Shown piece by piece: positions 12,338-63,387 of a stretch of DNA of 64,000 bases. The stretch is from positions 1 through 64,000 of the IMG/VR virus record IMGVR_UViG_3300044640_001495, one strand, 5' to 3'. The position numbers and the translations under genes were made by a program. The notes under the pieces were generated by a model, which saw only the letters and a list, made by a program, of their open reading frames with translations, did not search any database and was not told the DNA's origin. The number at the start of each line of letters is the position of its first letter. Position 1 is the first letter of the stretch.

Positions 12338-13879
12338 ATGAAAACAACAGACCTTTTTGCATTCAATAGATCATCTAAAAGACTAAATGAATCGTTGTCT
12401 AAAACTTTTGGGCGTAAACTAAACTTAGAAACATTCAGTGTTGAACAGCTGGAAGATGCACGTAATAAACTACGCACACAGATCTACACGGCCCGTAGCA
12501 GTTCTAACTTCAACGAAACGGTGGAAAACGATGCTCTAACACAGGCACAGTTCATGCACGATGCTATTGTTGCAGAACTTGCAGAGCGTGATGAGCCTAT
12601 TGTTGACAACACACAACTAGAAGAAGCACAAGCGTTCTATGTAATGCTCTTGGGACCACGTTCTGGCCAACGTGATCCATACCACGGTCCTTTTAATAGT
12701 CCAGACGAAGCACAGGCATGGATTGACACTGAATCACCTAATCCGGAAGATTACGAAGTAGGCGATTTCCCTGCTGGACAATTTGGACAATATGATAATG
12801 GCCAACCAGTACAAGAAGGTATGACGGAAGGTGGCAACTTTGACGAACAAGCGGTAGTAGATCTTCTTAAGAAATTCGACGAAGATATGAATGAAATTGG
12901 CGGCTACGGTGATCCCGACTATGATAAAATTATGGCGGCTCTAAGCAAGGGTGATATTGAGTCTGCCATCGATGAAATTTGGAATTCTTATTCCGATCAA
13001 GATGGCGGCGAACTTCGCAATATAGATTCGTATATTCAAGATCTAGAATCCGAAATTAGTTATGTTGTACAAGGATCAGACGACGAAGGCGGCGACACCG
13101 ATGATGCATATGCCCTAGCATCAGCAGGTCATGGTGGCGATGAAGACTATGGAACTTTTAATCAAGGCGAAAGTCTACAGAATGAAGCGTATATTAATAA
13201 TGCAGAAGATGCAATTAATTTACTAGCGGCAATTAGAGCACAATCTAAAATGGCAGAACGTGGTGGCGGCGAACCAGTCCGCCCTAATCAACTGGTCAAT
13301 GACCTTTGGGATGTCATGCAATGGATTGAAGCCAACATGAAAGAATCAATTGAAACAGAATCAAAAAATACAGGAGATAATATGCGTAATCTAAGAGAAG
13401 GTGAAATCCAGCAAGCGTCTGCGATTGTCACAGCAAAGACAATGGTTGACAGAGTTGGCCGTTGGATCGAGGAACTTTCTGGTATGGAGAACGATACTCT
13501 ATTACAGTTAGGCGATTCTATCCGTGACGAAATGGGACAAGAGCAGGCCAAGCAGTTTATATCTGCATCAGCTCCGGCTATCCAATCGGCACTAGAAAAT
13601 CTCAAAGCTACTCGCGAGGCCCTAGCTTCCAGCGTGAGAGCACTTACTGGCGAAGAACAAAGTGCTGAAATGCTAGGCGGCGAGCCAGGTGCAGACATGG
13701 CAGCTCCTGCAGAACCAGACGCCATGAATGCCGAGCCAGGAATGGATATGGGCGACGAAGTTGCAGGTGACGACTTTGATGCAGCTGAACCAGCAGCAGG
13801 GGGCCTAGGTGATGCAGGACGTGAACAGCGTGAAAGCATTGATCGTCAAAGCCGTTTGATGAAAGTATTGGCAGGATGA
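12338..13879 (+). CDS. acidic prohead core/scaffold-like protein
   Basis: Very Glu/Asp-rich, helical, many (L/I)xE sites, late promoter at 12305. Confidence 0.5.
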   Translation: MKTTDLFAFNRSSKRLNESLSKTFGRKLNLETFSVEQLEDARNKLRTQIYTARSSSNFNETVENDALTQAQFMHDAIVAELAERDEPIVDNTQLEEAQAFYVMLLGPRSGQRDPYHGPFNSPDEAQAWIDTESPNPEDYEVGDFPAGQFGQYDNGQPVQEGMTEGGNFDEQAVVDLLKKFDEDMNEIGGYGDPDYDKIMAALSKGDIESAIDEIWNSYSDQDGGELRNIDSYIQDLESEISYVVQGSDDEGGDTDDAYALASAGHGGDEDYGTFNQGESLQNEAYINNAEDAINLLAAIRAQSKMAERGGGEPVRPNQLVNDLWDVMQWIEANMKESIETESKNTGDNMRNLREGEIQQASAIVTAKTMVDRVGRWIEELSGMENDTLLQLGDSIRDEMGQEQAKQFISASAPAIQSALENLKATREALASSVRALTGEEQSAEMLGGEPGADMAAPAEPDAMNAEPGMDMGDEVAGDDFDAAEPAAGGLGDAGREQRESIDRQSRLMKVLAG

Positions 13880-24703: not shown

Positions 24704-24907
24704 ATGGTAACAGGAAAAGTAAAATGGTTTAACGACGCCAAAGGTTTTGGATTCATTACTCCGGACGATGGTGGCGCAGACTTATTTGCTCACTTTTCAC
24801 AGATTAATTCGAGTGGCTTCAAGAGCCTACAAGAAGGACAAAGTGTAAGGTTTGAAGTGACTCAGGGTCAAAAAGGCGAGCAGGCTAGTAATATTCAAGC
24901 TGCCTAA
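24704..24907 (+). CDS. cspA: cold-shock protein
   Basis: [17 protein letters not shown] (RNP1) and LFAHFS (RNP2). Confidence 0.95.
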
Positions 24908-24910
24908 AAA

Positions 24911-25270
24911 ATTGTTGTAGAAGTCTTAAAGTAAGGCATTCTGGACGCGGGTTCGACTCCCGCCAGGTCCACCATAAAGGAGATTAGTATGGATAACGAA
25001 TATAGTGCTCTAGTTGGCTTTATTGTTGTTATCGTAGTATTTGCTCTAGTCCTTTTATGATGGGCCTGCCATGGTTTCGACAGGGTGAGATAGGATAAAG
25101 ATCAACACGTGGGGTCACGTAAAATACAAAAAACGTAAATGCAAACGCAGATACATTCGACTTCAGCGCAATGAGCTTCACTGGAAACACTGTTTCCGGC
25201 AAAAGCAAAGTTGCTCTAGCTGCCTAAAAAACAGCGGTCCGAGGTAGTTATACCTTGTCATCCAAAATAG
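24911..25270 (+). ncRNA. ssrA: circularly permuted (two-piece) tmRNA
   Basis: Acceptor piece ...GGACGCGGGTTCGACTCCCGCCAGGTCCACCA ends at 24974. The coding piece starts GGGCCTG at 25062 and pairs with CAGGTCC, including G3-U70. Tag ORF 25141-25227 encodes ANADTFDFSAMSFTGNTVSGKSKVALAA*. Outer boundaries are approximate. Confidence 0.9.
24989..25060 (+). CDS. 23-aa hydrophobic peptide encoded in the tmRNA intervening segment
   Basis: AAGGAG RBS directly after CCA; MDNEYSALVGFIVVIVVFALVLL*; stop ends 1 nt before the tmRNA 5' end. Confidence 0.55.
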   Translation: MDNEYSALVGFIVVIVVFALVLL

Positions 25271-25271
25271 C

Positions 25272-25298
25272 AGAACCCGCTTCGGCGGGTTTCTTTTT
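25272..25298 (+). terminator. intrinsic terminator after tmRNA
   Basis: agaacccgc-TTCG-gcgggtttcttttt. Confidence 0.88.
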
Positions 25299-25328
25299 GG
25301 CAATATTTCCAAATTATCGTCTCGAAGT

Positions 25329-34555: not shown

Positions 34556-36457
34556 ATGTCTAAGATCATCGGTATCGATTTAGGTACCACAAACTCATGT
34601 GTAGCTGTTATTGAAAACGGCATCCCCAAAGTAATTGAAAATGCAGAAGGTGCTAGAACAACACCTTCAATCGTTGCCTACGGCAAAGATGAAATTCTCG
34701 TAGGTGCTTCAGCAAAACGTCAATCAGTTACTAACCCCAAAAATACAATCTATGCTTCAAAGCGTTTGATTGGACGCAAGTTTAAAGAGGAAGCTGTTCA
34801 AAAGGACATCAACCTTATGCCCTACGAAATCATGGAAGCCAAGAATGGCGATGCATGGGTTCGTGCTAATGGTCAAGAGTTGGCGCCTCCACAAATCTCA
34901 GCAGAAGTTTTGCGTAAGATGAAAAAGACAGCGGAGGATTATCTAGGTCATGAAGTTACTCAAGCAGTTATCACAGTTCCTGCGTACTTTAACGACAGCC
35001 AAAGACAAGCTACTAAAGACGCTGGACAAATCGCAGGCCTGGAGGTACTCCGTATTATTAACGAGCCTACTGCGGCAGCTCTTGCTTATGGCGTTGATAA
35101 AGCTGATAAAAGAGATAGGAAAATTGCTGTTTACGATCTTGGTGGCGGTACATTCGATGTTTCGATCATCGAAATAGCCAACGTAGATGGAGACAAGCAG
35201 ATCGAAGTATTGAGCACAAACGGCGATACATTCCTTGGCGGTGAAGACTTTGACCAACGTATTATGGATTACTTGGTTGAAGAATTCCGCAAGGATCAAG
35301 GTGTTGATCTAACCAAAGATGTACTTGCTCTACAGCGTTTAAAAGAATCTGCTGAGAAGGCAAAAATTGAATTGTCTAGCTCTGCAAGCACAAGTGTTAA
35401 TTTGCCATACATCACAGCAGACGCAAGTGGCCCTAAGCACATGAATATCACTATTAGCCGTAGCAAGTTAGAACAGCTTGTTGACGAGTTAATCACTCGC
35501 TCAATTGAGCCATGTAAAGTTGCCATGAAAGATGCAGGTGTCACAGCCGCTGACATCGATGAAGTTATTCTTGTTGGTGGTATGACACGTATGCCAAAGG
35601 TACAAGAAGCCGTTGAAAAATTATTTGGCAAGGCACCACGTAAGGATGTTAATCCAGACGAAGCTGTTGCCGCAGGTGCCGCAGTACAAGGTGCTGTTCT
35701 CGGTGGCGATCGTACTGATGTGTTGTTGCTAGATGTGACTCCACTGAGTTTGGGTATTGAAACAATGGGCGGTGTGTTTGCAAAGGTTATTCAAAAGAAC
35801 ACAACCATTCCGACTAAGGGACAGCAGACATTCTCAACAGCAGAAGACAATCAACCTGCGGTGACTATCAAGGTATTCCAAGGTGAGCGTGATCTAGTAC
35901 AATACAACAAATTGCTAGGTGAATTCAATCTTGAAGGTATTCAACCGCAACGTCGTGGACAGCCGCAAATCGAAGTTACATTTGATATTGATGCTAACGG
36001 TATCATGAATATCTCGGCCAAGGACAAGAGCACAGGCAAAGAAAACAAGATCACTATTAAATCAGATAGCGGTCTAAGCAAAGAAGAAATTGAACGCATG
36101 GTACGTGAAGCTGAAGAAAATGCAGAGAGTGATCAAAAAGCTCGAACATTAATTGATGCTCGCAACCAAGCTGAAGCAACTGTACATGAAGTTAAAAAAG
36201 ATCTTGAAGAATTTAAAGATGAATTAACTGATACAGAAAAGACAGAAATCGAGACAGCAGTTAAATCAGTCGAAGACGCTATGAAAGAAGATGACGCTGA
36301 TAAAATTAAAGCTGAACTCGAAAAAGTTTTTCCGGCAATGAAAACATTGTTGGAGAAAAAGCAGGCCAAGGAACAGGCAGCTCAGGCGCCTCAACCAGAA
36401 GCCAAAGCAGATGACAATGTGGTAGACGCTACGTTTACAGAAACTAAGTCTAGCTAA
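34556..36457 (+). CDS. dnaK: Hsp70 chaperone DnaK
   Basis: [26 protein letters not shown] and VTFDIDANG motifs. Confidence 0.98.
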
Positions 36458-40790: not shown

Positions 40791-42026
40791 ATGAAACAAA
40801 CACTATTATCCCTGGCCGTTGTAGCAGTATTGAGTGGGTGCGCATCAAGTTCGGCTATCAAAGAAAAAATAACTGGAAACCAGTTTGACGAACCGAAAGT
40901 CGAGTCTAGTAAATTTCTAAAGAAAGACTCTAATAAATTACAACCACCAGAAGGCGGACCGTTAACAGTGGCAGTGTATGGATTTAGAGATCTAACAGGG
41001 CAACGTAAAAGCCAGCCACTGATTGCGTCATTAAGTTCAGCTGTTACACAAGGTGCTGAAAACTATCTAATCAAGGCCCTACAGGATGTAGGTGATCAAC
41101 GCTGGTTCACAGTACTAGAACGTGTTGGCCTAGAGAACTTGATCAAAGAACGTCAAATGATTCGTCAAATGCGTGAGCAATACCAAGGCCGTGATGCCAA
41201 GATGTTGCCCCCAATGATGTTTGCCGGGATCATCATGGAAGGTGGCATTGTTGGCTACGATAGCAATACACTAACAGGCGGTAGTGGAGTAAGACTGTTT
41301 GGTATTGGGGCAAGCACACAATACCAATCAGACACTGTGACAGTTACCTTAAGAACAGTGAGCGTGTCTACAGGCGAAATTTTAACAACTGTGACAGTAA
41401 CTAAAACAGTGTTAAGTTATATGGACAAAGTGACATTATTGCGATTTGTTGGAGATGGCACAACTTTAGGTGCAAATGCAAATGCATTAGAGGGTGAGAT
41501 CGGCGGCAGCATAAATGAAAGTATCAACAAGGCAATCGACGTAGCTGTACAGGCAGCAGTGATTCAAACTATTAATGAAGGTGCTCGTAAAGGACACTGG
41601 GCATTTAAAAGCAATAAAGTAAGTTCTCCGGTTGCCGTTATTCCGGCGATACCTGCACCAGTAGTAATACCTGCACCAGTAGTAATACCTGCACCAGTAG
41701 TAATATCAGTACCAGTAGTAGAGGAGAAGAAAGATGTCGTGGTTCAATCACAAGCCAAACCCGAAACCAAAACCGAAGCCGTATCCAGTGCCCCCGCAGA
41801 AATAAAGAAAGAAGTTGTACCGGTTGAAAAACTTTCAGGTGAGATGATTTTAAAGGAAGCTTCTTACATTTATAAAGAGCCCGACCTAACAAGTCAAAAA
41901 ACTTGGCAGTTTAAGAAAGGTGCTTTAGTTACAATTATAGGACAAGAGGGTGATTGGGTAGCAGTCAGTGACTCACAAAAACGAAAAGGATTTGTTAATA
42001 AGGATGTACTGGTTAACAAACCTTAA
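40791..42026 (+). CDS. csgG: curli secretion channel CsgG-like lipoprotein with C-terminal Pro/Val linker and SH3-like domain
   Basis: LSG-C lipobox; VAVYGFRDLTGQRK, SSAVTQGA, LERVGLENLIKERQMIR, EGGIVGYD and VTVTLRTVSV.TGEI. Confidence 0.9.
   Translation: MKQTLLSLAVVAVLSGCASSSAIKEKITGNQFDEPKVESSKFLKKDSNKLQPPEGGPLTVAVYGFRDLTGQRKSQPLIASLSSAVTQGAENYLIKALQDVGDQRWFTVLERVGLENLIKERQMIRQMREQYQGRDAKMLPPMMFAGIIMEGGIVGYDSNTLTGGSGVRLFGIGASTQYQSDTVTVTLRTVSVSTGEILTTVTVTKTVLSYMDKVTLLRFVGDGTTLGANANALEGEIGGSINESINKAIDVAVQAAVIQTINEGARKGHWAFKSNKVSSPVAVIPAIPAPVVIPAPVVIPAPVVISVPVVEEKKDVVVQSQAKPETKTEAVSSAPAEIKKEVVPVEKLSGEMILKEASYIYKEPDLTSQKTWQFKKGALVTIIGQEGDWVAVSDSQKRKGFVNKDVLVNKP
41649..41720 (+). repeat. 18-bp coding tandem repeat (IPAPVV x3 plus one degenerate unit)
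   Basis: atacctgcaccagtagta x3, then atatcagtaccagtagta. Confidence 0.9.
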
Positions 42027-45802: not shown

Positions 45803-47845
45803 ATGCTGAAAAAAATCCTAACTAGTCCTTGGACTGCCCTATTAACATTGGCACTTATTGTAAGTATAAGAATCGCCGATCCTGTCTTTGTAGAAAGTGT
45901 AAGACTACGCTACTTTGACACACTGATTACTAATAAAACTCCAACTGCCAATAACATCTATACGGTAAACATAGATGAAGCAGCATTGGACAAATATGGC
46001 CAGTGGCCTTTACCAAGGGCAGAGTATGCAAAAATTATTAAAGATCTTTATGATCGTGGTGCTGGCCTTGTTGTGCTCAATGTTATCATGGCTGAGCCTG
46101 ATCGCACTGGTGGCGATGCTGTTCTCGCAACGGCCCTAAAACAATATCCAGTTGTAATGGGCAGCGTACCATCACAAAAAACTAAGAACTCTCCTCGCAA
46201 TCCAGGTAGTGCTGTACTAGGTCCAGAGTGGCAGGATCAAATTGTACAATACCCGGGACTTATTGCCAATGTACCTCAGTTAGAAAATGCAGCAGCAGGC
46301 ATTGGTATCGTTAGTACACTGCCAGAAGTAGACGGTGTTAATCGACGACTGCCCCTAGTTGTATCCGTTGATGGTAAATTATATCCCAGTATGTCTATGG
46401 AAGCACTTAGAGTCGCAGCTGGTGATTCAACCTTCCAAGTCAAGCTCAATGAAAATGGTGTTGAGAAAATGCGCATACCCAAGTTTGGTCCTATTACAAC
46501 AGATGCGTTAGGTCGTGTATGGATCGATTGGAGTCAAGAAAACCAACAGGCGAGTCTTTTGGACTTGCCCAAAAACTTTAATGGTGCTATAGTTATAGTA
46601 GGTCCAACAGCCGCAGGCATTGCTAATCCTTTGCCTACAGCTAAAGGTGCAGTGTGGCCGCAGGATGTACAAGCGGCAGCAATGGCAACTATGATCAACG
46701 GAGTGGTAATTCAACGTCCCGACTATGCCGACGGAGTTGAAATCCTAGCATTACTAGTATTCGGCATATTGTTAATTTTCTTATCGAGGTGGACTTATGT
46801 TGGAATTGGTTCTGCTGTGGTTATTGTTGGTGCCGTCGTTCCTGGTACTATGTACGCTTTCAGTAATTGGCTCATCCTATCAGATGCGACTGCAATCACG
46901 TTTGGGCTTGTTATCGTTGCTCTTCATACTTATGGCGTTAAATTTGTAAGCGAGTTCTTACAGAAGCAGGCCATAAAGAAACAGTTTGCGGGTTATTGCT
47001 CTAAAGAAGTTGTAGAGCTACTACAAAAAGATCCAGACTTAATCAAGCGTGGTGTACGCAAAGATGTATCAGTTATGTTCAGTGACCTGCGTGGCTTTAC
47101 TCCTATTGGTGAACACTATGGTGATGATGTAGGCGGACTAGGCAAGTATATGAACGGCTACATGGATGCTATCAGTCGTCCTATCATGAACAACAACGGC
47201 ATGATATTAAAGTATGTAGGTGATGCGAGTATGCACATACATGGTGCTCCTATCGAAGACACCAATCATGCTAGAACTATTGTTGCTGTTGGCCTAGAGA
47301 TGCTGGATGCTGTTGACGAATACACAAAACTGATGGAAGCACAAGGATTACCACCTGCCGCAATGGGTTGGGGTTGCAATACTGGTATTGGCTTTATTGG
47401 CGAGATGGGATCAACTGACAGACACGGTTATGACATCTTAGGTGATATGGTGTCAACCGCGGCACGACTAGAAGCACGTTGTAAGGCCTATGGTGTACTA
47501 TGTATTATTGGTGCTGAAACATACAATCGTACCAAAGACGACTTCTTTTATCTAATGATAGATAACTTACAGCCTAAAGGAAAAACTGTGGCAGACTTGA
47601 TCTATACAGTATTACGTACTAAGGGTGCAGACTACACTAGAGATAAGATAGCACACGAAGTGATGCATGACTTGTACCGACAGAAAAAGTTTGACGAAGC
47701 TGCCGCTATGTGTGCAAAGCTAAAGGGCAACTTTGGTGGACAAATGGACAAGTACTACAAAATCTGGATCGAGCGTTGCGACTTTATGAAACTGCAAGAT
47801 CTAGGCGACAACTGGAACGGCGAGTTTGTTGCTCACGAGAAGTAA
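45803..47845 (+). CDS. CHASE2 sensor plus class III adenylate/guanylate cyclase
   Basis: VNIDEAALDKYGQWP.PR and EVDGVNRRLPL CHASE2 motifs; three TM helices; VMFSDLRGFT, LKYVGD and GDMVSTAARLE. Confidence 0.92.
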   Translation: MLKKILTSPWTALLTLALIVSIRIADPVFVESVRLRYFDTLITNKTPTANNIYTVNIDEAALDKYGQWPLPRAEYAKIIKDLYDRGAGLVVLNVIMAEPDRTGGDAVLATALKQYPVVMGSVPSQKTKNSPRNPGSAVLGPEWQDQIVQYPGLIANVPQLENAAAGIGIVSTLPEVDGVNRRLPLVVSVDGKLYPSMSMEALRVAAGDSTFQVKLNENGVEKMRIPKFGPITTDALGRVWIDWSQENQQASLLDLPKNFNGAIVIVGPTAAGIANPLPTAKGAVWPQDVQAAAMATMINGVVIQRPDYADGVEILALLVFGILLIFLSRWTYVGIGSAVVIVGAVVPGTMYAFSNWLILSDATAITFGLVIVALHTYGVKFVSEFLQKQAIKKQFAGYCSKEVVELLQKDPDLIKRGVRKDVSVMFSDLRGFTPIGEHYGDDVGGLGKYMNGYMDAISRPIMNNNGMILKYVGDASMHIHGAPIEDTNHARTIVAVGLEMLDAVDEYTKLMEAQGLPPAAMGWGCNTGIGFIGEMGSTDRHGYDILGDMVSTAARLEARCKAYGVLCIIGAETYNRTKDDFFYLMIDNLQPKGKTVADLIYTVLRTKGADYTRDKIAHEVMHDLYRQKKFDEAAAMCAKLKGNFGGQMDKYYKIWIERCDFMKLQDLGDNWNGEFVAHEK

Positions 47846-59761: not shown

Positions 59762-60436
59762 CTAGATAATAGTAGATAGTTCAGCAGGAGTTAACTTAGG
59801 TGGCTCTGGAAAAGGACGTGGATCAGAAAACCCAACTGTTGTTGGTCCGTTGTTTACCGTTTCTCTTACTCGAGAGTCATTGGGTTGGCCAACAGATAGA
59901 AACACAATGGGCCATTCATTTTCTGCAAGACCTAAAATCTTGTGAGCTTGGTCTTCGAAAAAGCATGATGTAAAGGCAGTACGATATCCTAGAGATTCTG
60001 CTTGTATCATAGAAAAACTAGCAGCAATCATTGTATCTTTTTCAGAACGTGTTCGAACAGTATATTGTGTTTTAGGATCAGCAGATCTAGAAGATACATT
60101 TATTCCTTGTTCACGTACTGTAGTACCATTAGAAACAAGACCTAGGTCAAAGTTGTCTAAGATAGGAACTCCTATCCATGCTAACAGTAAAGGTGATTGG
60201 GCTGTTAGTAAATGTTTACGAATTGGCATGTTAATGAAACTGTCTAAGAACAGTTTATTTTTTAATTCAAGAGCTTTGTGGCTTTGAGTTAATGCAATAA
60301 CACGCCAAGGATATGCACGTTGCTTACTAGGGGCTGAACAACCAGCTGTTAGTATTGAGTCAATATGCTCTTGAGGTATAGCGTCATTAGTAAATGCTCG
60401 CTGTGTTCGTCGATTTAAAAAGATGTCTAACATCAA
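59762..60436 (-). CDS. nitroreductase-family flavoprotein inserted antisense in the tRNA array
   Basis: NRRTQRAF, I..IL.AG..APS...AYPW, MIQAESLGYRTAF and FLSVG. Confidence 0.8.
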   Translation of the reverse strand: MMLDIFLNRRTQRAFTNDAIPQEHIDSILTAGCSAPSKQRAYPWRVIALTQSHKALELKNKLFLDSFINMPIRKHLLTAQSPLLLAWIGVPILDNFDLGLVSNGTTVREQGINVSSRSADPKTQYTVRTRSEKDTMIAASFSMIQAESLGYRTAFTSCFFEDQAHKILGLAENEWPIVFLSVGQPNDSRVRETVNNGPTTVGFSDPRPFPEPPKLTPAELSTII

Positions 60437-61002: not shown

Positions 61003-61094
61003 GCCAGCGAGACTTGGTAGTCAGAGAGGTTTTATAAACCTTTTAGCGCCAGATTAGCGTTCTTGAGAGGGTTCGATTCCCTCCGCTGGTACCA
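61003..61094 (+). tRNA. tRNA-Ile(TAT) with long variable arm
   Basis: gaggt-TT TAT AA-acctt; variable arm agcgc-cagatta-gcgtt; acceptor gccagcg/cgctggt; A73; CCA. Confidence 0.8.
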
Positions 61095-61124: not shown

Positions 61125-61153
61125 TTGACACACAGGTGATTAGACTATATAAT
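61125..61153 (+). promoter_or_regulatory. sigma70-type promoter inside the tRNA array
   Basis: TTGACA-N17-TATAAT. Confidence 0.85.
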
Positions 61154-61350: not shown

Positions 61351-61438
61351 GGAGCATTGGCCGACCGGTTAAGGCAACAGATTGCTAATCTGTCATTCAG
61401 TAATGGGTGAGTAGGTTCGATTCCTACATGCTCCGCCA
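61351..61438 (+). tRNA. tRNA-Ser(GCT)
   Basis: acaga-TT GCT AA-tctgt; long variable arm; CCA. Confidence 0.92.
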
Positions 61439-61441
61439 TAA

Positions 61442-61641
61442 CGTTCCGAGTGTCTTCGGATAGTGTGACCCACACGATGAGAAGTAGTGTGACAACTACG
61501 GGTGGTAGTCTTTAAACCCAAAGGCCGCTAGCAATGCGAGAACGGTCCCTGTCGGGAAGCGGGTGGAAGGTACGAGTGAGGGGTATGATAGCGTCATATC
61601 TTTCTGTACTATAATTACCGCCGGGGGATGCAGAGCAACCA
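61442..61641 (+). ncRNA. candidate ~200-nt structured RNA of unknown family in the tRNA array
   Basis: At least seven short stems, GC-richer than flanks, no ORF of 60 aa or more, ends in ACCA. Confidence 0.55.
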
Positions 61642-61662
61642 GATTTTAATAAAGGAAATACA

Positions 61663-61875
61663 ATGAAACCAGGTCCAAATTATAGAATGAGTGCTTTGAC
61701 TAAAGCAAGTCTAGCAATGAGTAGAGTTCTAGATCCGCACAAACGAGGTGAATGGAAACGTGCTATGATTGATGCTGAACTATGTGCTGCCGTGGTGCCA
61801 AAACGTGAACCACGCAAACAGGGAGGTGGTAATTTTACCACTCATGCATCCGGAACAGTATCCAGTGGAGGCTAA
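61663..61875 (+). CDS. small basic hypothetical protein
   Basis: AAGGA RBS; 70 aa. Confidence 0.6.
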   Translation: MKPGPNYRMSALTKASLAMSRVLDPHKRGEWKRAMIDAELCAAVVPKREPRKQGGGNFTTHASGTVSSGG

Positions 61876-62212: not shown

Positions 62213-62830
62213 ATGAAATTTGCATATTTTAATCCAACTGTGATGGCTGTGGCCGATGTGCCGGCGGATGTATTCACCAATTTGAAAAGTCTAGTAGATA
62301 CTGCACATACCAAGACAGAACTCAATGATGAGGGTAATCCTGCTATTAGCATACGTGGCGGACAGCAGATTCAACTCTTGCCAAATCAATTCAATCTAGA
62401 CACAGGGCATATCAAACGCTATGTAGAAGCGCAGTGCCAGGAATACATGGATGCGCAGATCAAACAAAGCGGTCGCAACGATCTGTCAGCATTTCAACCC
62501 ATGTTGGTTTCAGCATGGACTATACGTCAGACTGCAGGCGACTATCAGGCCATGCACAATCATGAAGCACATATCAGCGGCAACATCTACATTGATGTTC
62601 CTGATCTTGATCTCACAGACAACATATCGGATGCTGTGATTGAGTTTAGATTGCCGGTGGTAAGAAACCCTGCACATTTTGTTTTTGTAGATCAATGGCG
62701 GTTTACCCCAAATCCCATGAAGATGATCATATTTCCCAGCTATATTCCACACACTGTGTATCCGTGGAAAGGCAAGGGCCACAGAACAATTTTGGCTTGG
62801 GATGTGAAATTAGTGGCAAAAAAGACTTGA
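62213..62830 (+). CDS. 2OG-Fe(II) oxygenase (TIGR02466-like)
   Basis: SAWT...GDYQAMHNH..ISGNIY, IFPSYIPHTVYP and RTILAWD. Confidence 0.82.
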   Translation: MKFAYFNPTVMAVADVPADVFTNLKSLVDTAHTKTELNDEGNPAISIRGGQQIQLLPNQFNLDTGHIKRYVEAQCQEYMDAQIKQSGRNDLSAFQPMLVSAWTIRQTAGDYQAMHNHEAHISGNIYIDVPDLDLTDNISDAVIEFRLPVVRNPAHFVFVDQWRFTPNPMKMIIFPSYIPHTVYPWKGKGHRTILAWDVKLVAKKT

Positions 62831-62855
62831 CATTTAGTCTAAAGAGTGCTATAAT
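62827..62855 (+). promoter_or_regulatory. sigma70-type promoter
   Basis: TTGACA-N17-TATAAT. Confidence 0.88.
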
Positions 62856-63138: not shown

Positions 63139-63387
63139 ATGAACAAACAACTTTCATCAGAAGACGCAGTGGCAGCATACGGCGATAGATTTGAAATGGT
63201 ATTGGCTGCAAGTCAACGAGCTCGAGAGTTGAAAAACGGTCATGCTCCTAGAGTTGATAAAGGTAGTCATGGATTTATTGTTACTGCTCTAAACGAAATC
63301 GAACAGGGCAAGTATACTAGACTTGATTTTTTAAAAACTGTTAAAACAAAGAAGAAAGGACAACGTGATGAACATTTCCCTACGTAA
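63139..63387 (+). CDS. rpoZ: RNA polymerase omega subunit-like protein
   Basis: EDAV...GDRFEMVLAASQRARELKNG..P.V......IVTALNEIEQG. Confidence 0.8.
   Translation: MNKQLSSEDAVAAYGDRFEMVLAASQRARELKNGHAPRVDKGSHGFIVTALNEIEQGKYTRLDFLKTVKTKKKGQRDEHFPT

What the first reader, a model, noticed from the sequence alone, without database searches (positions are those of the whole stretch)
61442..61641. About 200-nt highly structured RNA of unknown class embedded in the tRNA operon and ending in ACCA
Seen: starts 3 nt after tRNA-Ser CCA. Stems are tccga/tcgga, gtgtg/cacac, gtagt/actac, gggt/accc, cgc-GCAA-gcg, tccc/ggga, gcgg-gt/accgc enclosing gtac/gtac and ggtatga/tcatatc. The GC content is clearly above that of the flanks. 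GGGUGGAAGG and AGAGCAA faintly recall RNase P S-domain segments, but no convincing P4 helix is present. Inference: a new tRNA-array-associated ncRNA, possibly a ribozyme, tRNA mimic or protein sponge.
Basis: partly seen in the sequence, partly recalled or inferred. Interest (0 to 1): 0.72.

Follow-up and report, generated by a model that had tools for sequence, protein, structure and literature searches.

The report
New structured RNA in phage tRNA arrays
The 200-base stretch is a real member of a previously undescribed family of intricately folded non-coding RNAs carried in the tRNA gene arrays of giant lake-water phages; its job is unknown, but its conservation and fold point to an important partner.

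Summary
On its own the sequence folds no better than shuffles (z = -0.68). Comparison is what shows a conserved RNA of about 197 nt at window 61441-61637. On 92 distinct sequences that were not used to build the model, 99.3% of cells pair against 84.5% in shuffles, and 21 of 39 pairs show compensatory changes. The fold has three 5' hairpins, two of which kiss. A closing helix then encloses three hairpins and an invariant purine-rich strand. The 3' tail probably pairs back into this core as a pseudoknot. No Rfam 15 family matches three diverse members, even at E <= 10. It is not homologous to T4 rnaC or rnaD. It was absent from 185,579 cellular genomes in an exact-pattern scan and from 50,697 GenBank phage records. 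It sits in tRNA arrays like a tRNA gene, with one copy in each of five complete genomes (two in a sixth, possibly chimeric record), and a complete close relative lacks it. Lake metatranscriptome contigs cover it deeply. The ACCA end belongs to this lineage only. Function is unknown. My best guess is a stable trans-acting RNA, released by tRNA processing, that binds a conserved partner.

The parts
61125..61153 (+). Sigma-70-type promoter (TTGACA, 17 nt, TATAAT). It probably drives tRNA-Leu(UAG), tRNA-Val, tRNA-Ser(GCU) and the element.
   Evidence: 12 of 12 consensus match. No terminator-like site between it and the element, or after the element.
61351..61438 (+). tRNA-Ser(GCU). Its CCA end lies 2 nt upstream of the element.
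   Evidence: ARAGORN; Rfam tRNA, 56.6 bits.
61441..61637 (+). The conserved structured RNA, 197 nt, from ACGUU... to ...GCAGAGCA.
   Evidence: Alignment A1 of 76 distinct copies; model R1 scores it at 238 bits; pair counts.
61445..61460 (+). H1 hairpin (UCCGA / GUGUCU / UCGGA).
   Evidence: All 5 pairs show compensatory changes on the independent set.
61463..61475 (+). H2 hairpin (GUGUG / ACC / CACAC) with a conserved ACC loop.
   Evidence: 3 of 5 pairs show compensatory changes. Loop position 28 changes together with positions 63 and 76.
61476..61484 (+). Nearly invariant single strand GAUGAGAAG (J2/3).
   Evidence: Column counts over 151 distinct sequences.
61485..61498 (+). H3 hairpin (UAGU / GUGACA / ACUA). 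Its loop GACA (61491-61494) kisses the H1 loop UGUC (61451-61454).
   Evidence: Stem covariation. Loop-loop pairings are GUC/GAC in 97 sequences, AUC/GAU in 27, GUU/GAC in 14 and AACG/CGU in 5. None of 2000 partner shuffles reached the observed complementarity.
61501..61506 (+). H8 5' strand GGUGGU, which pairs with ACCGCC at 61617-61622 and closes the multi-helix core.
   Evidence: RNAalifold. Invariant apart from U63 to C, which turns a U-G pair into C-G in 7 sequences. The second GGGUGG at 61561-61566 is an untested alternative partner.
61508..61525 (+). H4 hairpin (GUCUU / UAAACCCA / AAGGC) with a conserved AACC loop. Some relatives carry extra hairpins ahead of it.
   Evidence: 4 of 5 pairs show compensatory changes; expansions are visible in A1.
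61526..61538 (+). H5 hairpin (CGC / UAGCAAU / GCG).
   Evidence: One pair alternates C-G and U-A (112 and 39 of 151 sequences); the other two never vary.
61545..61550 (+). 5' strand of the pseudoknot, GUCCCU. It pairs with GGGGAU at 61624-61629. An alternative local hairpin H6 pairs UCCC (61546-61549) with GGGA (61554-61557).
   Evidence: 99.9% of cells pair and there are 7 further pair types. Positions 110-184 show U-G 129, U-A 20, G-C 1 and C-G 1. Positions 105-189 show G-U 102, G-C 44, A-U 4 and A-C 1. Slid controls reach at most 81%. H6 shows no double change.
61551..61568 (+). Invariant purine-rich strand GUCGGGAAGCGGGUGGAA inside the core. I take it as the candidate functional surface.
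   Evidence: Column counts: nearly every position is identical in 149-151 of 151 sequences; positions 117 and 128 alternate A and G.
61569..61610 (+). H7, a variable arm (outer stem GGUACG/UGUACU, inner hairpin 61578-61603). In most relatives it carries a k-turn-like GUGAUG / YUGAU internal loop; the window copy does not. One relative reduces it to 13 nt.
   Evidence: 5 of 6 outer pairs show compensatory changes. Length ranges from 13 nt to more than 100 nt. The k-turn reading is by eye and was not tested.
61611..61622 (+). J7/8 (AUAAUU) and the H8 3' strand (ACCGCC).
   Evidence: Invariant or nearly so.
61624..61637 (+). 3' tail: pseudoknot 3' strand GGGGAU, then the invariant GCAGAGCA, for which no partner was found.
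61638..61641 (+). ACCA. It is specific to this lineage and is not part of the conserved RNA.
   Evidence: Present only in copies that lie between tRNA-Ser and the 70-aa gene.

Best explanation
Shown: window 61441-61637 is one copy of a conserved family of structured non-coding RNAs, about 170-280 nt long. So far the family is found only in uncultured giant (about 320-525 kb) and some smaller phages of lakes and estuaries. It sits in phage tRNA gene arrays on the tRNA strand, spaced like a tRNA gene.

Its fold has these parts:
- Three 5' hairpins, whose first and third loops kiss.
- A closing helix that encloses three more hairpins and an invariant 18-nt purine-rich strand.
- A 3' tail that probably pairs back into that core as a pseudoknot.

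Inferred: the RNA is transcribed with the tRNAs, here from the perfect sigma-70-type promoter at 61125-61153. The host enzymes that trim the neighbouring tRNAs set it free: trimming of the upstream tRNA's 3' end, and RNase P cutting at a downstream tRNA where there is one. It then accumulates as a stable RNA that acts in trans. Its rigid pseudoknotted scaffold would display the invariant single strands (GAUGAGAAG, AGAACG, GUCGGGAAGCGGGUGGAA, AUAAUU, GCAGAGCA) as a binding surface. I think the most likely partner is a conserved component of the host's translation or tRNA-handling machinery, either sequestered or redirected during infection. The role would be accessory, because close relatives do without the RNA.

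The single confidence figure given for this explanation (0.4) is for the whole statement, identity and mechanism together.
For: Family and fold:
- At least 231 copies, 151 distinct.
- On 92 distinct metagenome copies not used to build the model, 99.3% of cells pair against 84.5% in shuffles. 21 of 39 pairs have changes on both sides. The covariation score is 0.391 against 0.135, and slid controls reach at most 0.059.
- The H1-H3 kissing loop covaries. The pseudoknot varies consistently.

Context:
- 81 distinct neighbourhoods, nearly all inside same-strand tRNA arrays.
- 154 of 229 copies start within 5 nt of a CCA.
- 26 of the 81 end 2-10 nt before the next tRNA.
- Where no tRNA precedes it, a recurrent promoter-like TATTTATAAAAGA stands directly at its 5' end.
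- The window has a perfect promoter upstream and no terminator.

Expression: six lake, freshwater or estuary RNA libraries hold part of the stretch. In the four laid, contig depth over the conserved core reaches about 1400-1500 (X17) and 226-285 (X15), against 0-60 over the flanking coding sequence.

Not cis-regulatory: the downstream neighbour is a tRNA, another non-tRNA element, or one of several unrelated ORFs.

Accessory: one copy in each of five complete genomes and two in a sixth. It is absent from G011, a complete 383-kb genome that is the closest to G000 in gene content among the four fetched. Syntenic sites in relatives run straight from the tRNA-Ser CCA into the next gene's ribosome-binding site.

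Precedent (and my own knowledge): GOLLD, ROOL and T4 species 1 and 2 are stable phage RNAs of tRNA islands whose function is unknown. GOLLD lies in the same array as this RNA in L182.
Against: - No partner has been identified.
- A gene-content screen found only 7 genes shared by the RNA-bearing genomes and missing from G011. None is a plausible RNA partner, and there is only one complete genome without the RNA.
- The genome encodes no Ro60 and no L7Ae-type k-turn binder.
- Depth in RNA libraries comes from assembled contigs summed over related phages at 90% likeness or more. It therefore shows presence in RNA libraries, not mature ends or abundance per cell.
- No read-level 5' or 3' ends are available.
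- An invariant, junction-rich pseudoknotted core fits a ribozyme or a small-molecule aptamer equally well.
- The 5' and 3' ends do not pair, so RNase P cannot recognise the RNA itself. The origin of its 5' end is inferred only.
Confidence: 0.4

Rival explanations
1. It is a ribozyme. Either it cleaves itself, helping to cut the polycistronic tRNA transcript at its own borders, or it acts in trans on tRNAs or other RNAs.
For: About 60 invariant positions are concentrated in junctions and single strands. The fold has two long-range pairings: a kissing loop and a pseudoknot that would stack on the closing helix. Its borders coincide with tRNA borders. From my own knowledge, HDV-like 'theta' ribozymes next to phage tRNAs are a precedent for ribozymes in this setting.
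Against: No match to any Rfam ribozyme family at E <= 10 for three diverse members. Cleavage at its own 5' border would leave the upstream tRNA with a 2',3'-cyclic phosphate on its CCA end, which is unfavourable. The RNA also occurs without flanking tRNAs, directly after a promoter-like motif or between ORFs. Host enzymes already process such arrays.
Confidence: 0.15
2. It is an RNA that assembles with itself, a small cousin of GOLLD and ROOL. It would form homo-oligomers through its complementary H1 and H3 loops, used between molecules rather than within one.
For: The H1 and H3 loops are complementary and covary, and the data cannot say whether they pair in cis or in trans. GOLLD and ROOL come from the same niche and form cages held by intermolecular contacts. 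GOLLD occurs in the same array in L182.
Against: At about 200 nt it is far smaller than the known cage-forming RNAs. H1 and H3 are separated only by H2 and 11 nt, which suits an intramolecular kiss. No test could be run because complex prediction refuses jobs without a protein.
Confidence: 0.12
3. It is a trans-acting aptamer or sponge for a small molecule or ion, for example a signalling nucleotide, expressed at tRNA-like levels.
For: Its architecture resembles large riboswitch aptamers: a multi-helix junction, a kissing loop, a k-turn-like bend in most members, and an invariant purine-rich core.
Against: There is no expression platform and no consistent downstream gene. It resembles no riboswitch family in Rfam. 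To my knowledge no free-standing RNA sponge for metabolites is known.
Confidence: 0.08
4. It acts in cis on the tRNA transcript, as a folded spacer. It would organise or protect processing (an entry or stop signal for RNase E, RNase P or exonucleases) and have no role of its own after excision.
For: It always lies on the tRNA strand with tRNA-like spacing. Related arrays hold other non-tRNA folded modules, here called elements B and C. It is dispensable in relatives.
Against: A mere spacer would not need about 60 invariant positions and a conserved tertiary fold across phages that share about half or fewer of their genes (193-212 of 442 G000 ORFs). It also occurs outside arrays. RNA-library contigs cover the core more deeply than the tRNA-Ser next to it.
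Confidence: 0.1

Closest known systems
GOLLD RNA (Rfam RF02032) and ROOL RNA
   Same: Phage-encoded, elaborately folded RNAs found next to tRNA islands. GOLLD was first seen in lake metagenomes. Function is unknown. A GOLLD copy (L182:7640-8102, 210 bits) lies about 1.3 kb upstream of a copy of this RNA in the same array.
   Different: GOLLD and ROOL are about 400-800 nt or more and form cages of many copies. This RNA is 170-280 nt. The Rfam models do not match it. Neither family was found in the window, in the rest of this array or in the second small tRNA array.
T4 species 1 and species 2 RNAs (rnaC, rnaD)
   Same: Small stable RNAs of unknown function encoded inside a phage tRNA cluster, directly abutting a tRNA. 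From my own knowledge they are co-transcribed and processed with the tRNAs.
   Different: No homology. Model R1 run without filters gives nothing above 8 bits on the T4 cluster. They are shorter (139 and 119 nt), and rnaC carries a tRNA-like T arm, which this RNA lacks.
Bacterial RNase P RNA
   Same: It also works on tRNAs. There is a faint local likeness: GAGAACGGUCC here against GAGGAAAGUCC of conserved region I (recalled from memory), followed by a long-range helix.
   Different: No Rfam RNase P model matches at E <= 10. The long-range helix here is a true pseudoknot (order A, B, A', B') and not a nested P4. There is no CR-V and no P1-P3 frame.
Large riboswitch aptamers (lysine, cobalamin) and T-box leaders
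   Same: Multi-helix junction, loop-loop kiss and a k-turn-like bend. The GGGUGG and ACCGC strings recall the T-box motif, as I remember it.
   Different: It is not placed upstream of a consistent gene. It has no expression platform and no Rfam match. Here GGUGGU and ACCGCC pair with each other across about 110 nt.
Bacterial and phage Y RNAs (YrlA)
   Same: Non-coding RNAs sometimes encoded next to tRNAs in phages (paper listed).
   Different: No tRNA-like T-arm module, no Rfam match, and no Ro60/TROVE gene in the genome.

Membership tests
tRNA / tmRNA | Cloverleaf with a T arm (GTTCRANYC), paired 5' and 3' ends, and a CCA end. | tested here: not met
   ARAGORN and Rfam tRNA/tmRNA models call nothing in 61439-61662. 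The ends do not pair. The ACCA is specific to this lineage.
RNase P RNA | A match to a covariance model, with the CR-I/CR-V P4 helix inside a P1-P3 frame. | tested here: not met
   No RNase P family at E <= 10 in three diverse members. The long-range helix found here is a pseudoknot with the closing helix, not a nested P4.
GOLLD / ROOL | A match to the Rfam covariance model of the conserved domain. | tested here: not met
   No hit on the element, while the same scan finds GOLLD at 210 bits in L182.
T4 rnaC / rnaD | Sequence and structure homology to the T4 species 1 and 2 RNAs. | tested here: not met
   R1 run without filters on the T4 tRNA cluster gives a best score of 8.1 bits, and that hit is not on rnaC or rnaD.
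Y RNA (YrlA) | A Ro60-binding stem plus a tRNA-like module, with a Ro60 (TROVE) gene in the genome. | tested here: not met
   No Rfam match. No TROVE domain in the 353-kb genome, while the control genomes gave hits.
Riboswitch / T-box leader | A cis position upstream of a consistent gene family with an expression platform, and a match to a known aptamer model. | tested here: not met
   Downstream neighbours are tRNAs, other RNA elements or unrelated ORFs. No Rfam match.
Known self-cleaving ribozymes (hammerhead, twister, HDV-like, hatchet, pistol, glmS) | A match to the family's covariance model. | tested here: not met
   None at E <= 10. Catalytic activity itself cannot be tested with these tools.
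Phage tRNA-island-associated stable ncRNA (a functional kind, not a homology family) | Phage-encoded, on the tRNA strand within or at the edge of a tRNA array, with a fold conserved by covariation, non-coding and transcribed. | tested here: met
   Context; covariation; no conserved ORF; found in RNA libraries. Stability and mature ends were not shown.

The most novel reading that the evidence does not exclude
The RNA is a new class of functional RNA machine: a ribozyme, or an RNA-only assembly or sponge. Giant phages would deploy it alongside their tRNAs to act directly on the tRNA pool, the ribosome or a defence signal. The kissing loop, the pseudoknot and the invariant purine-rich strand would form its active or binding site.
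Probability: 0.2. Interest if true: 0.9.

Novelty: new variant of a known kind. Interest (0 to 1): 0.74.

Why it matters
Phage tRNA islands are already known to hide large RNAs whose function nobody understands, such as GOLLD, ROOL and the T4 species 1 and 2 RNAs. This finding adds a compact family that is very abundant in lake metagenomes. About 60 positions are invariant and the fold is well determined, with a kissing loop and a likely pseudoknot.

At 170-200 nt it is small enough for direct biochemistry and structure work: probing, ligand screens, cleavage assays and cryo-EM. The family also offers natural variants, from a 170-nt minimal form to expanded arms, and natural knock-outs in close relatives that lack it. 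That could make the question 'what do phage tRNA-island RNAs do?' more tractable than it is with the giant RNAs.

Tried and rejected
- **Single-sequence thermodynamics.** Not significant (z = -0.68), so it cannot support the claim.
- **Rfam.** Gathering and E <= 10 scans of the window copy, an expanded member and a minimal member gave only noise.
- **BLASTN against 50,697 GenBank phage records.** No match.
- **Paralogues in the genome.** None.
- **Exact-pattern scan of 185,579 bacterial and archaeal genomes.** 0 hits. This is a stringent 24-nt pattern, so diverged copies could be missed.
- **T4 rnaC and rnaD.** Not homologous.
- **RNase P idea.** A local GAGAACGGUCC likeness, but the wrong topology and no model match.
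- **SRP domain IV, cobalamin riboswitch, T-box, sarcin-ricin loop and CsrA-site likenesses noticed by eye.** Rejected: no Rfam support, the likeness holds in a subset of sequences only, or it conflicts with helices supported by covariation.
- **tRNA-like cloverleaf reading of the core.** H5's loop UAGCAAU resembles a tRNA-Cys anticodon loop. Rejected as within chance, and there are no T or D arm features.
- **Small ORF in H7.** Rejected. The arm is hypervariable in sequence and length while its stems covary.
- **Ro60 and L7Ae partners.** Absent from the genome.
- **Gene-content screen.** G000, G001, G003 and G004 (with the RNA) were compared against G011 (without). Seven genes tracked the RNA: an Hc1-like protein, DUF2452, three unknowns, a carbamoyltransferase and a sugar epimerase. 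DUF2452 is in 10 of 10 RNA-bearing records but also in G012, which lacks the RNA, and the family has more than 3000 members. No convincing partner emerged.
- **Literature.** Four searches, one on sequence strings. The only hit was a chance match to a PCR primer.

Full report
**Where it is**

The window is the first 64 kb of a 353,123-bp virus record, a single contig with 41% GC that CheckV rates 98% complete. The genome carries 32 tRNA genes and a permuted tmRNA. The finding lies inside the main tRNA array. tRNA-Ser(GCU) ends at 61438 and a 70-aa ORF starts at 61663. The 224 nt between them hold no tRNA, no Rfam family and no ORF longer than 33 aa. A perfect sigma-70-type promoter at 61125-61153 precedes tRNA-Leu(UAG), tRNA-Val, tRNA-Ser(GCU) and the stretch. 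No terminator-like site follows.

**Is the observation more than chance?**

Taken alone, no. The 207-nt stretch folds to -62.9 kcal/mol, against -59.9 +/- 4.4 for dinucleotide shuffles (z = -0.68), and 48 of 200 shuffles fold at least as well. Comparison settles it.

- Relatives found through the neighbouring 70-aa and 205-aa proteins show the stretch either present with compensatory differences or cleanly absent. Where it is absent, the tRNA-Ser CCA runs straight into the ribosome-binding site of the 70-aa gene.
- Two 16-nt patterns from the conserved blocks hit 92 and more than 119 viral contigs. About 50 loci across the two scans were chance matches.
- A 26-nt pattern hit more than 120 metagenome contigs.
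- In all I extracted 231 copies, 151 of them distinct.

**The fold**

An alignment of 76 distinct copies (A1) gives an RNAalifold consensus of 39 pairs, 21 of which have compensatory changes. I built a covariance model from it (R1) and aligned 100 metagenome copies that had not been used to build it (A2). On their 92 distinct sequences:

| Measure | Observed | Shuffled |
|---|---|---|
| Cells forming a standard pair | 99.3% | 84.5 +/- 0.4% (0 of 500 shuffles as high) |
| Pairs with a change on both sides | 21 of 39 | 15.6 |
| Covariation score | 0.391 | 0.135 |

Slid controls reached a covariation score of at most 0.059.

In element numbering, position 1 is window 61441. The helices are:

| Helix | Positions | Support |
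|---|---|---|
| H1 | 5-9 / 16-20 | covariation |
| H2 | 23-27 / 31-35, loop ACC | covariation |
| H3 | 45-48 / 55-58 | covariation |
| H8 (closing) | 61-66 / 177-182 | conserved |
| H4 | 68-72 / 81-85, loop AACC | covariation |
| H5 | 86-88 / 96-98 | one covarying pair |
| H7 (variable arm) | 129-134 / 165-170 plus an inner hairpin | covariation |

The window coordinates of each part were checked against the sequence.

Mutual information exposed a loop-loop kiss between H1 and H3. Over the 151 sequences the paired loop triplets are GUC/GAC in 97, AUC/GAU in 27, GUU/GAC in 14 and AACG/CGU in 5. None of 2000 partner shuffles reached the observed complementarity.

The 3' tail (184-189, GGGGAY) can pair with 105-110 (GUCCCU).
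- 99.9% of cells pair.
- Positions 110-184 show U-G 129, U-A 20, G-C 1 and C-G 1.
- Positions 105-189 show G-U 102, G-C 44, A-U 4 and A-C 1.
- Slid controls reach at most 81%.

This pseudoknot excludes the local hairpin H6 (106-109 / 114-117). H6 never shows a double change and is broken in the one sequence (L084) that has the compensated G-C pair in the pseudoknot. I rate the pseudoknot as probable, and a switch between the two forms as possible.

Three positions change together in 7 otherwise diverse sequences and nowhere else: A28 in the H2 loop, U63 in H8 and A76 in the H4 loop. This points to a tertiary contact that I cannot resolve.

Whether ACCGCC pairs with the first GGGUGG (60-65) or the second (121-126) is not decided by the data.

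About 60 positions are invariant. They include the strands GAUGAGAAG, AGAACG, GUCGGGAAGCGGGUGGAA and AUAAUU, and the terminal GCAGAGCA.

H7 varies from 13 nt to more than 100 nt. In most members, though not in the window copy, it has a GUGAUG / YUGAU internal loop that looks like a k-turn. That reading is by eye and was not tested.

Conservation ends at ...GCAGAGCA. The ACCA that follows in the window is confined to its own lineage.

**Context and distribution**

- In 81 distinct neighbourhoods the RNA is almost always inside a same-strand tRNA array.
- 154 of 229 copies begin within 5 nt of a CCA. The commonest upstream tRNAs are Tyr and Ser(GCU).
- 26 of the 81 end 2-10 nt before the next tRNA, often Cys or Ala.
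- Where no tRNA precedes it, a recurrent TATTTATAAAAGA motif abuts the 5' end. It may be a promoter, which would put the transcription start at the conserved ACG (inference).
- Complete genomes of 345-353 kb carry one copy each. A 525-kb record carries two.
- G011 lacks it. G011 is a complete 383-kb genome that shares more genes with this phage (255 of 442 ORFs) than the three RNA-bearing genomes compared (193-212). Two relatives that are 70-75% complete, and several array-bearing fragments, lack it too. The RNA is therefore an accessory cassette.
- It was not found in 50,697 GenBank phage records by BLASTN.
- It was not found in 185,579 bacterial and archaeal genomes with a stringent pattern.
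- The runs that hold the locus are lake water, freshwater and estuary samples. Two contigs from the metagenome scan are labelled marine.

**Expression**

Six metatranscriptome runs hold 13-33% of the sampled words of a 1.6-kb stretch around the RNA. In the four that I laid, contig depth over the conserved core (61456-61563) is 1386-1499 in X17 and 226-285 in X15. The coding sequence downstream shows 0-60, and tRNA-Ser shows 19-86.

These are assembled contigs pooled over related phages at 90% likeness or more. They show that the family is present in RNA libraries well above the neighbouring genes. They give neither mature ends nor abundance per cell.

**What it is not**

- Rfam 15 gives nothing at E <= 10 for the window copy, an expanded member (L206) or a minimal member (L159).
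- R1 finds nothing in the T4 tRNA cluster that encodes rnaC and rnaD.
- The genome has no Ro60 and no L7Ae homologue.
- Several likenesses seen by eye did not survive: RNase P CR-I, SRP domain IV, the cobalamin core, the T-box motif, the sarcin-ricin loop and CsrA sites. They failed against the covariation-supported helices, against the rest of the family, or against Rfam.
- The downstream partners are too varied for a cis-regulatory leader.

**What it most likely does**

Shown: it is a conserved, accessory, phage-only RNA with a compact pseudoknotted fold. It is placed and spaced like a tRNA gene and is present in RNA libraries.

Inferred: it is transcribed with the tRNAs, released by the enzymes that trim its neighbours, and accumulates as a stable trans-acting RNA. 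Its invariant single strands would form a binding surface for a conserved partner, and I favour a component of the host translation or tRNA-handling apparatus. This rests on analogy with the other RNAs of phage tRNA islands and on the pattern of conservation, not on a direct test.

A screen for co-occurring genes gave seven candidates. None was convincing, and only one complete genome without the RNA was available.

The rivals are a ribozyme, a self-assembling RNA that uses the H1 and H3 loops between molecules, a small-molecule aptamer or sponge, and a purely cis-acting processing spacer. None is excluded. Each would be settled by simple bench experiments on an RNA of about 200 nt.

**Novelty and verdict**

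I found no description of this RNA in Rfam 15 or in four full-text searches, one of them on its most conserved strings. It is a new RNA family within a known kind, the stable structured RNAs of phage tRNA islands whose function is not understood. I therefore file it as a new variant of a known kind.

It is worth following up. It is abundant, sharply conserved and structurally rich, and it is small enough to study directly.

Noticed in passing
L113, 86 nt immediately downstream of the element copy at 13236-13432 (minus strand); 70 loci in all: A second conserved non-tRNA element ('B', about 85 nt) often follows the RNA in related arrays. Its ends form a long stem (AUAUUGAAGCACAU... / ...GUGUGUUUCAAUAU) and its interior varies. 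It has no Rfam match and is absent from this genome.
   Followed up: partly
L062:5125-5275 and many other loci: A third conserved non-tRNA element ('C', about 150 nt) is closed by the stem UAUAGUCAAGCA / UGCUUGACUAUA and sits between the RNA or element B and the next tRNA. It has no Rfam match at gathering score and is absent from this genome.
   Followed up: partly
Upstream flanks of many family copies (listed): Two more recurrent sequences precede the RNA in some arrays...GCUAAGUGGUAUCCCGUUAUGGGGCCAGCCCACCA and ...GCACUAGGUCCUGCAACCGUGGCUCUCCCC.
   Followed up: no
L182:7640-8102: A GOLLD RNA (Rfam RF02032, 210 bits) lies in the same tRNA array, about 1.3 kb upstream of a copy of the new RNA (L182:9368-9569).
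   Followed up: partly
window 61003-61094: ARAGORN calls a 92-nt tRNA-Ile(UAU) with a long extra arm, but the Rfam tRNA model does not report it at gathering score. The same sequence is conserved in relatives (L033, L034), so it is an unusual tRNA or a tRNA-like gene.
   Followed up: no
window 24882-25318: The phage encodes a permuted (two-piece type) tmRNA that matches the betaproteobacterial tmRNA model. This may hint at the host group. A relative (L121) has one too.
   Followed up: no
window 62827-62855: A second perfect sigma-70-type promoter (12 of 12, with an extended -10 TG) lies after the 2OG-Fe(II) oxygenase gene, just downstream of the array segment.
   Followed up: no
window 63139-63387; 34556-36457; 40791-42026; 45803-47845; 59762-60436: Unusual phage cargo: an RNA polymerase omega (Rpb6)-like ORF, a full-length Hsp70/DnaK, a CsgG-like protein with an SH3 domain, a CHASE2-nucleotide cyclase, and a nitroreductase on the opposite strand in the middle of the tRNA array.
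   Followed up: partly
G002 (record of L088, 524,565 bp): This record has two copies of the RNA and two copies of the DUF2452 gene, at mirrored positions and on opposite strands. It may be a chimeric or duplicated assembly rather than a 525-kb genome.
   Followed up: no
G000:C1:122586-123059 (L507): A 157-aa DUF2452 protein is present in all 10 RNA-bearing large records and missing from G011 and G013. It is very strongly conserved, with more than 3000 metagenome relatives, many at 85-100% identity. Function is unknown. The link to the RNA is weak, because the protein is also in G012, which lacks the RNA.
   Followed up: partly
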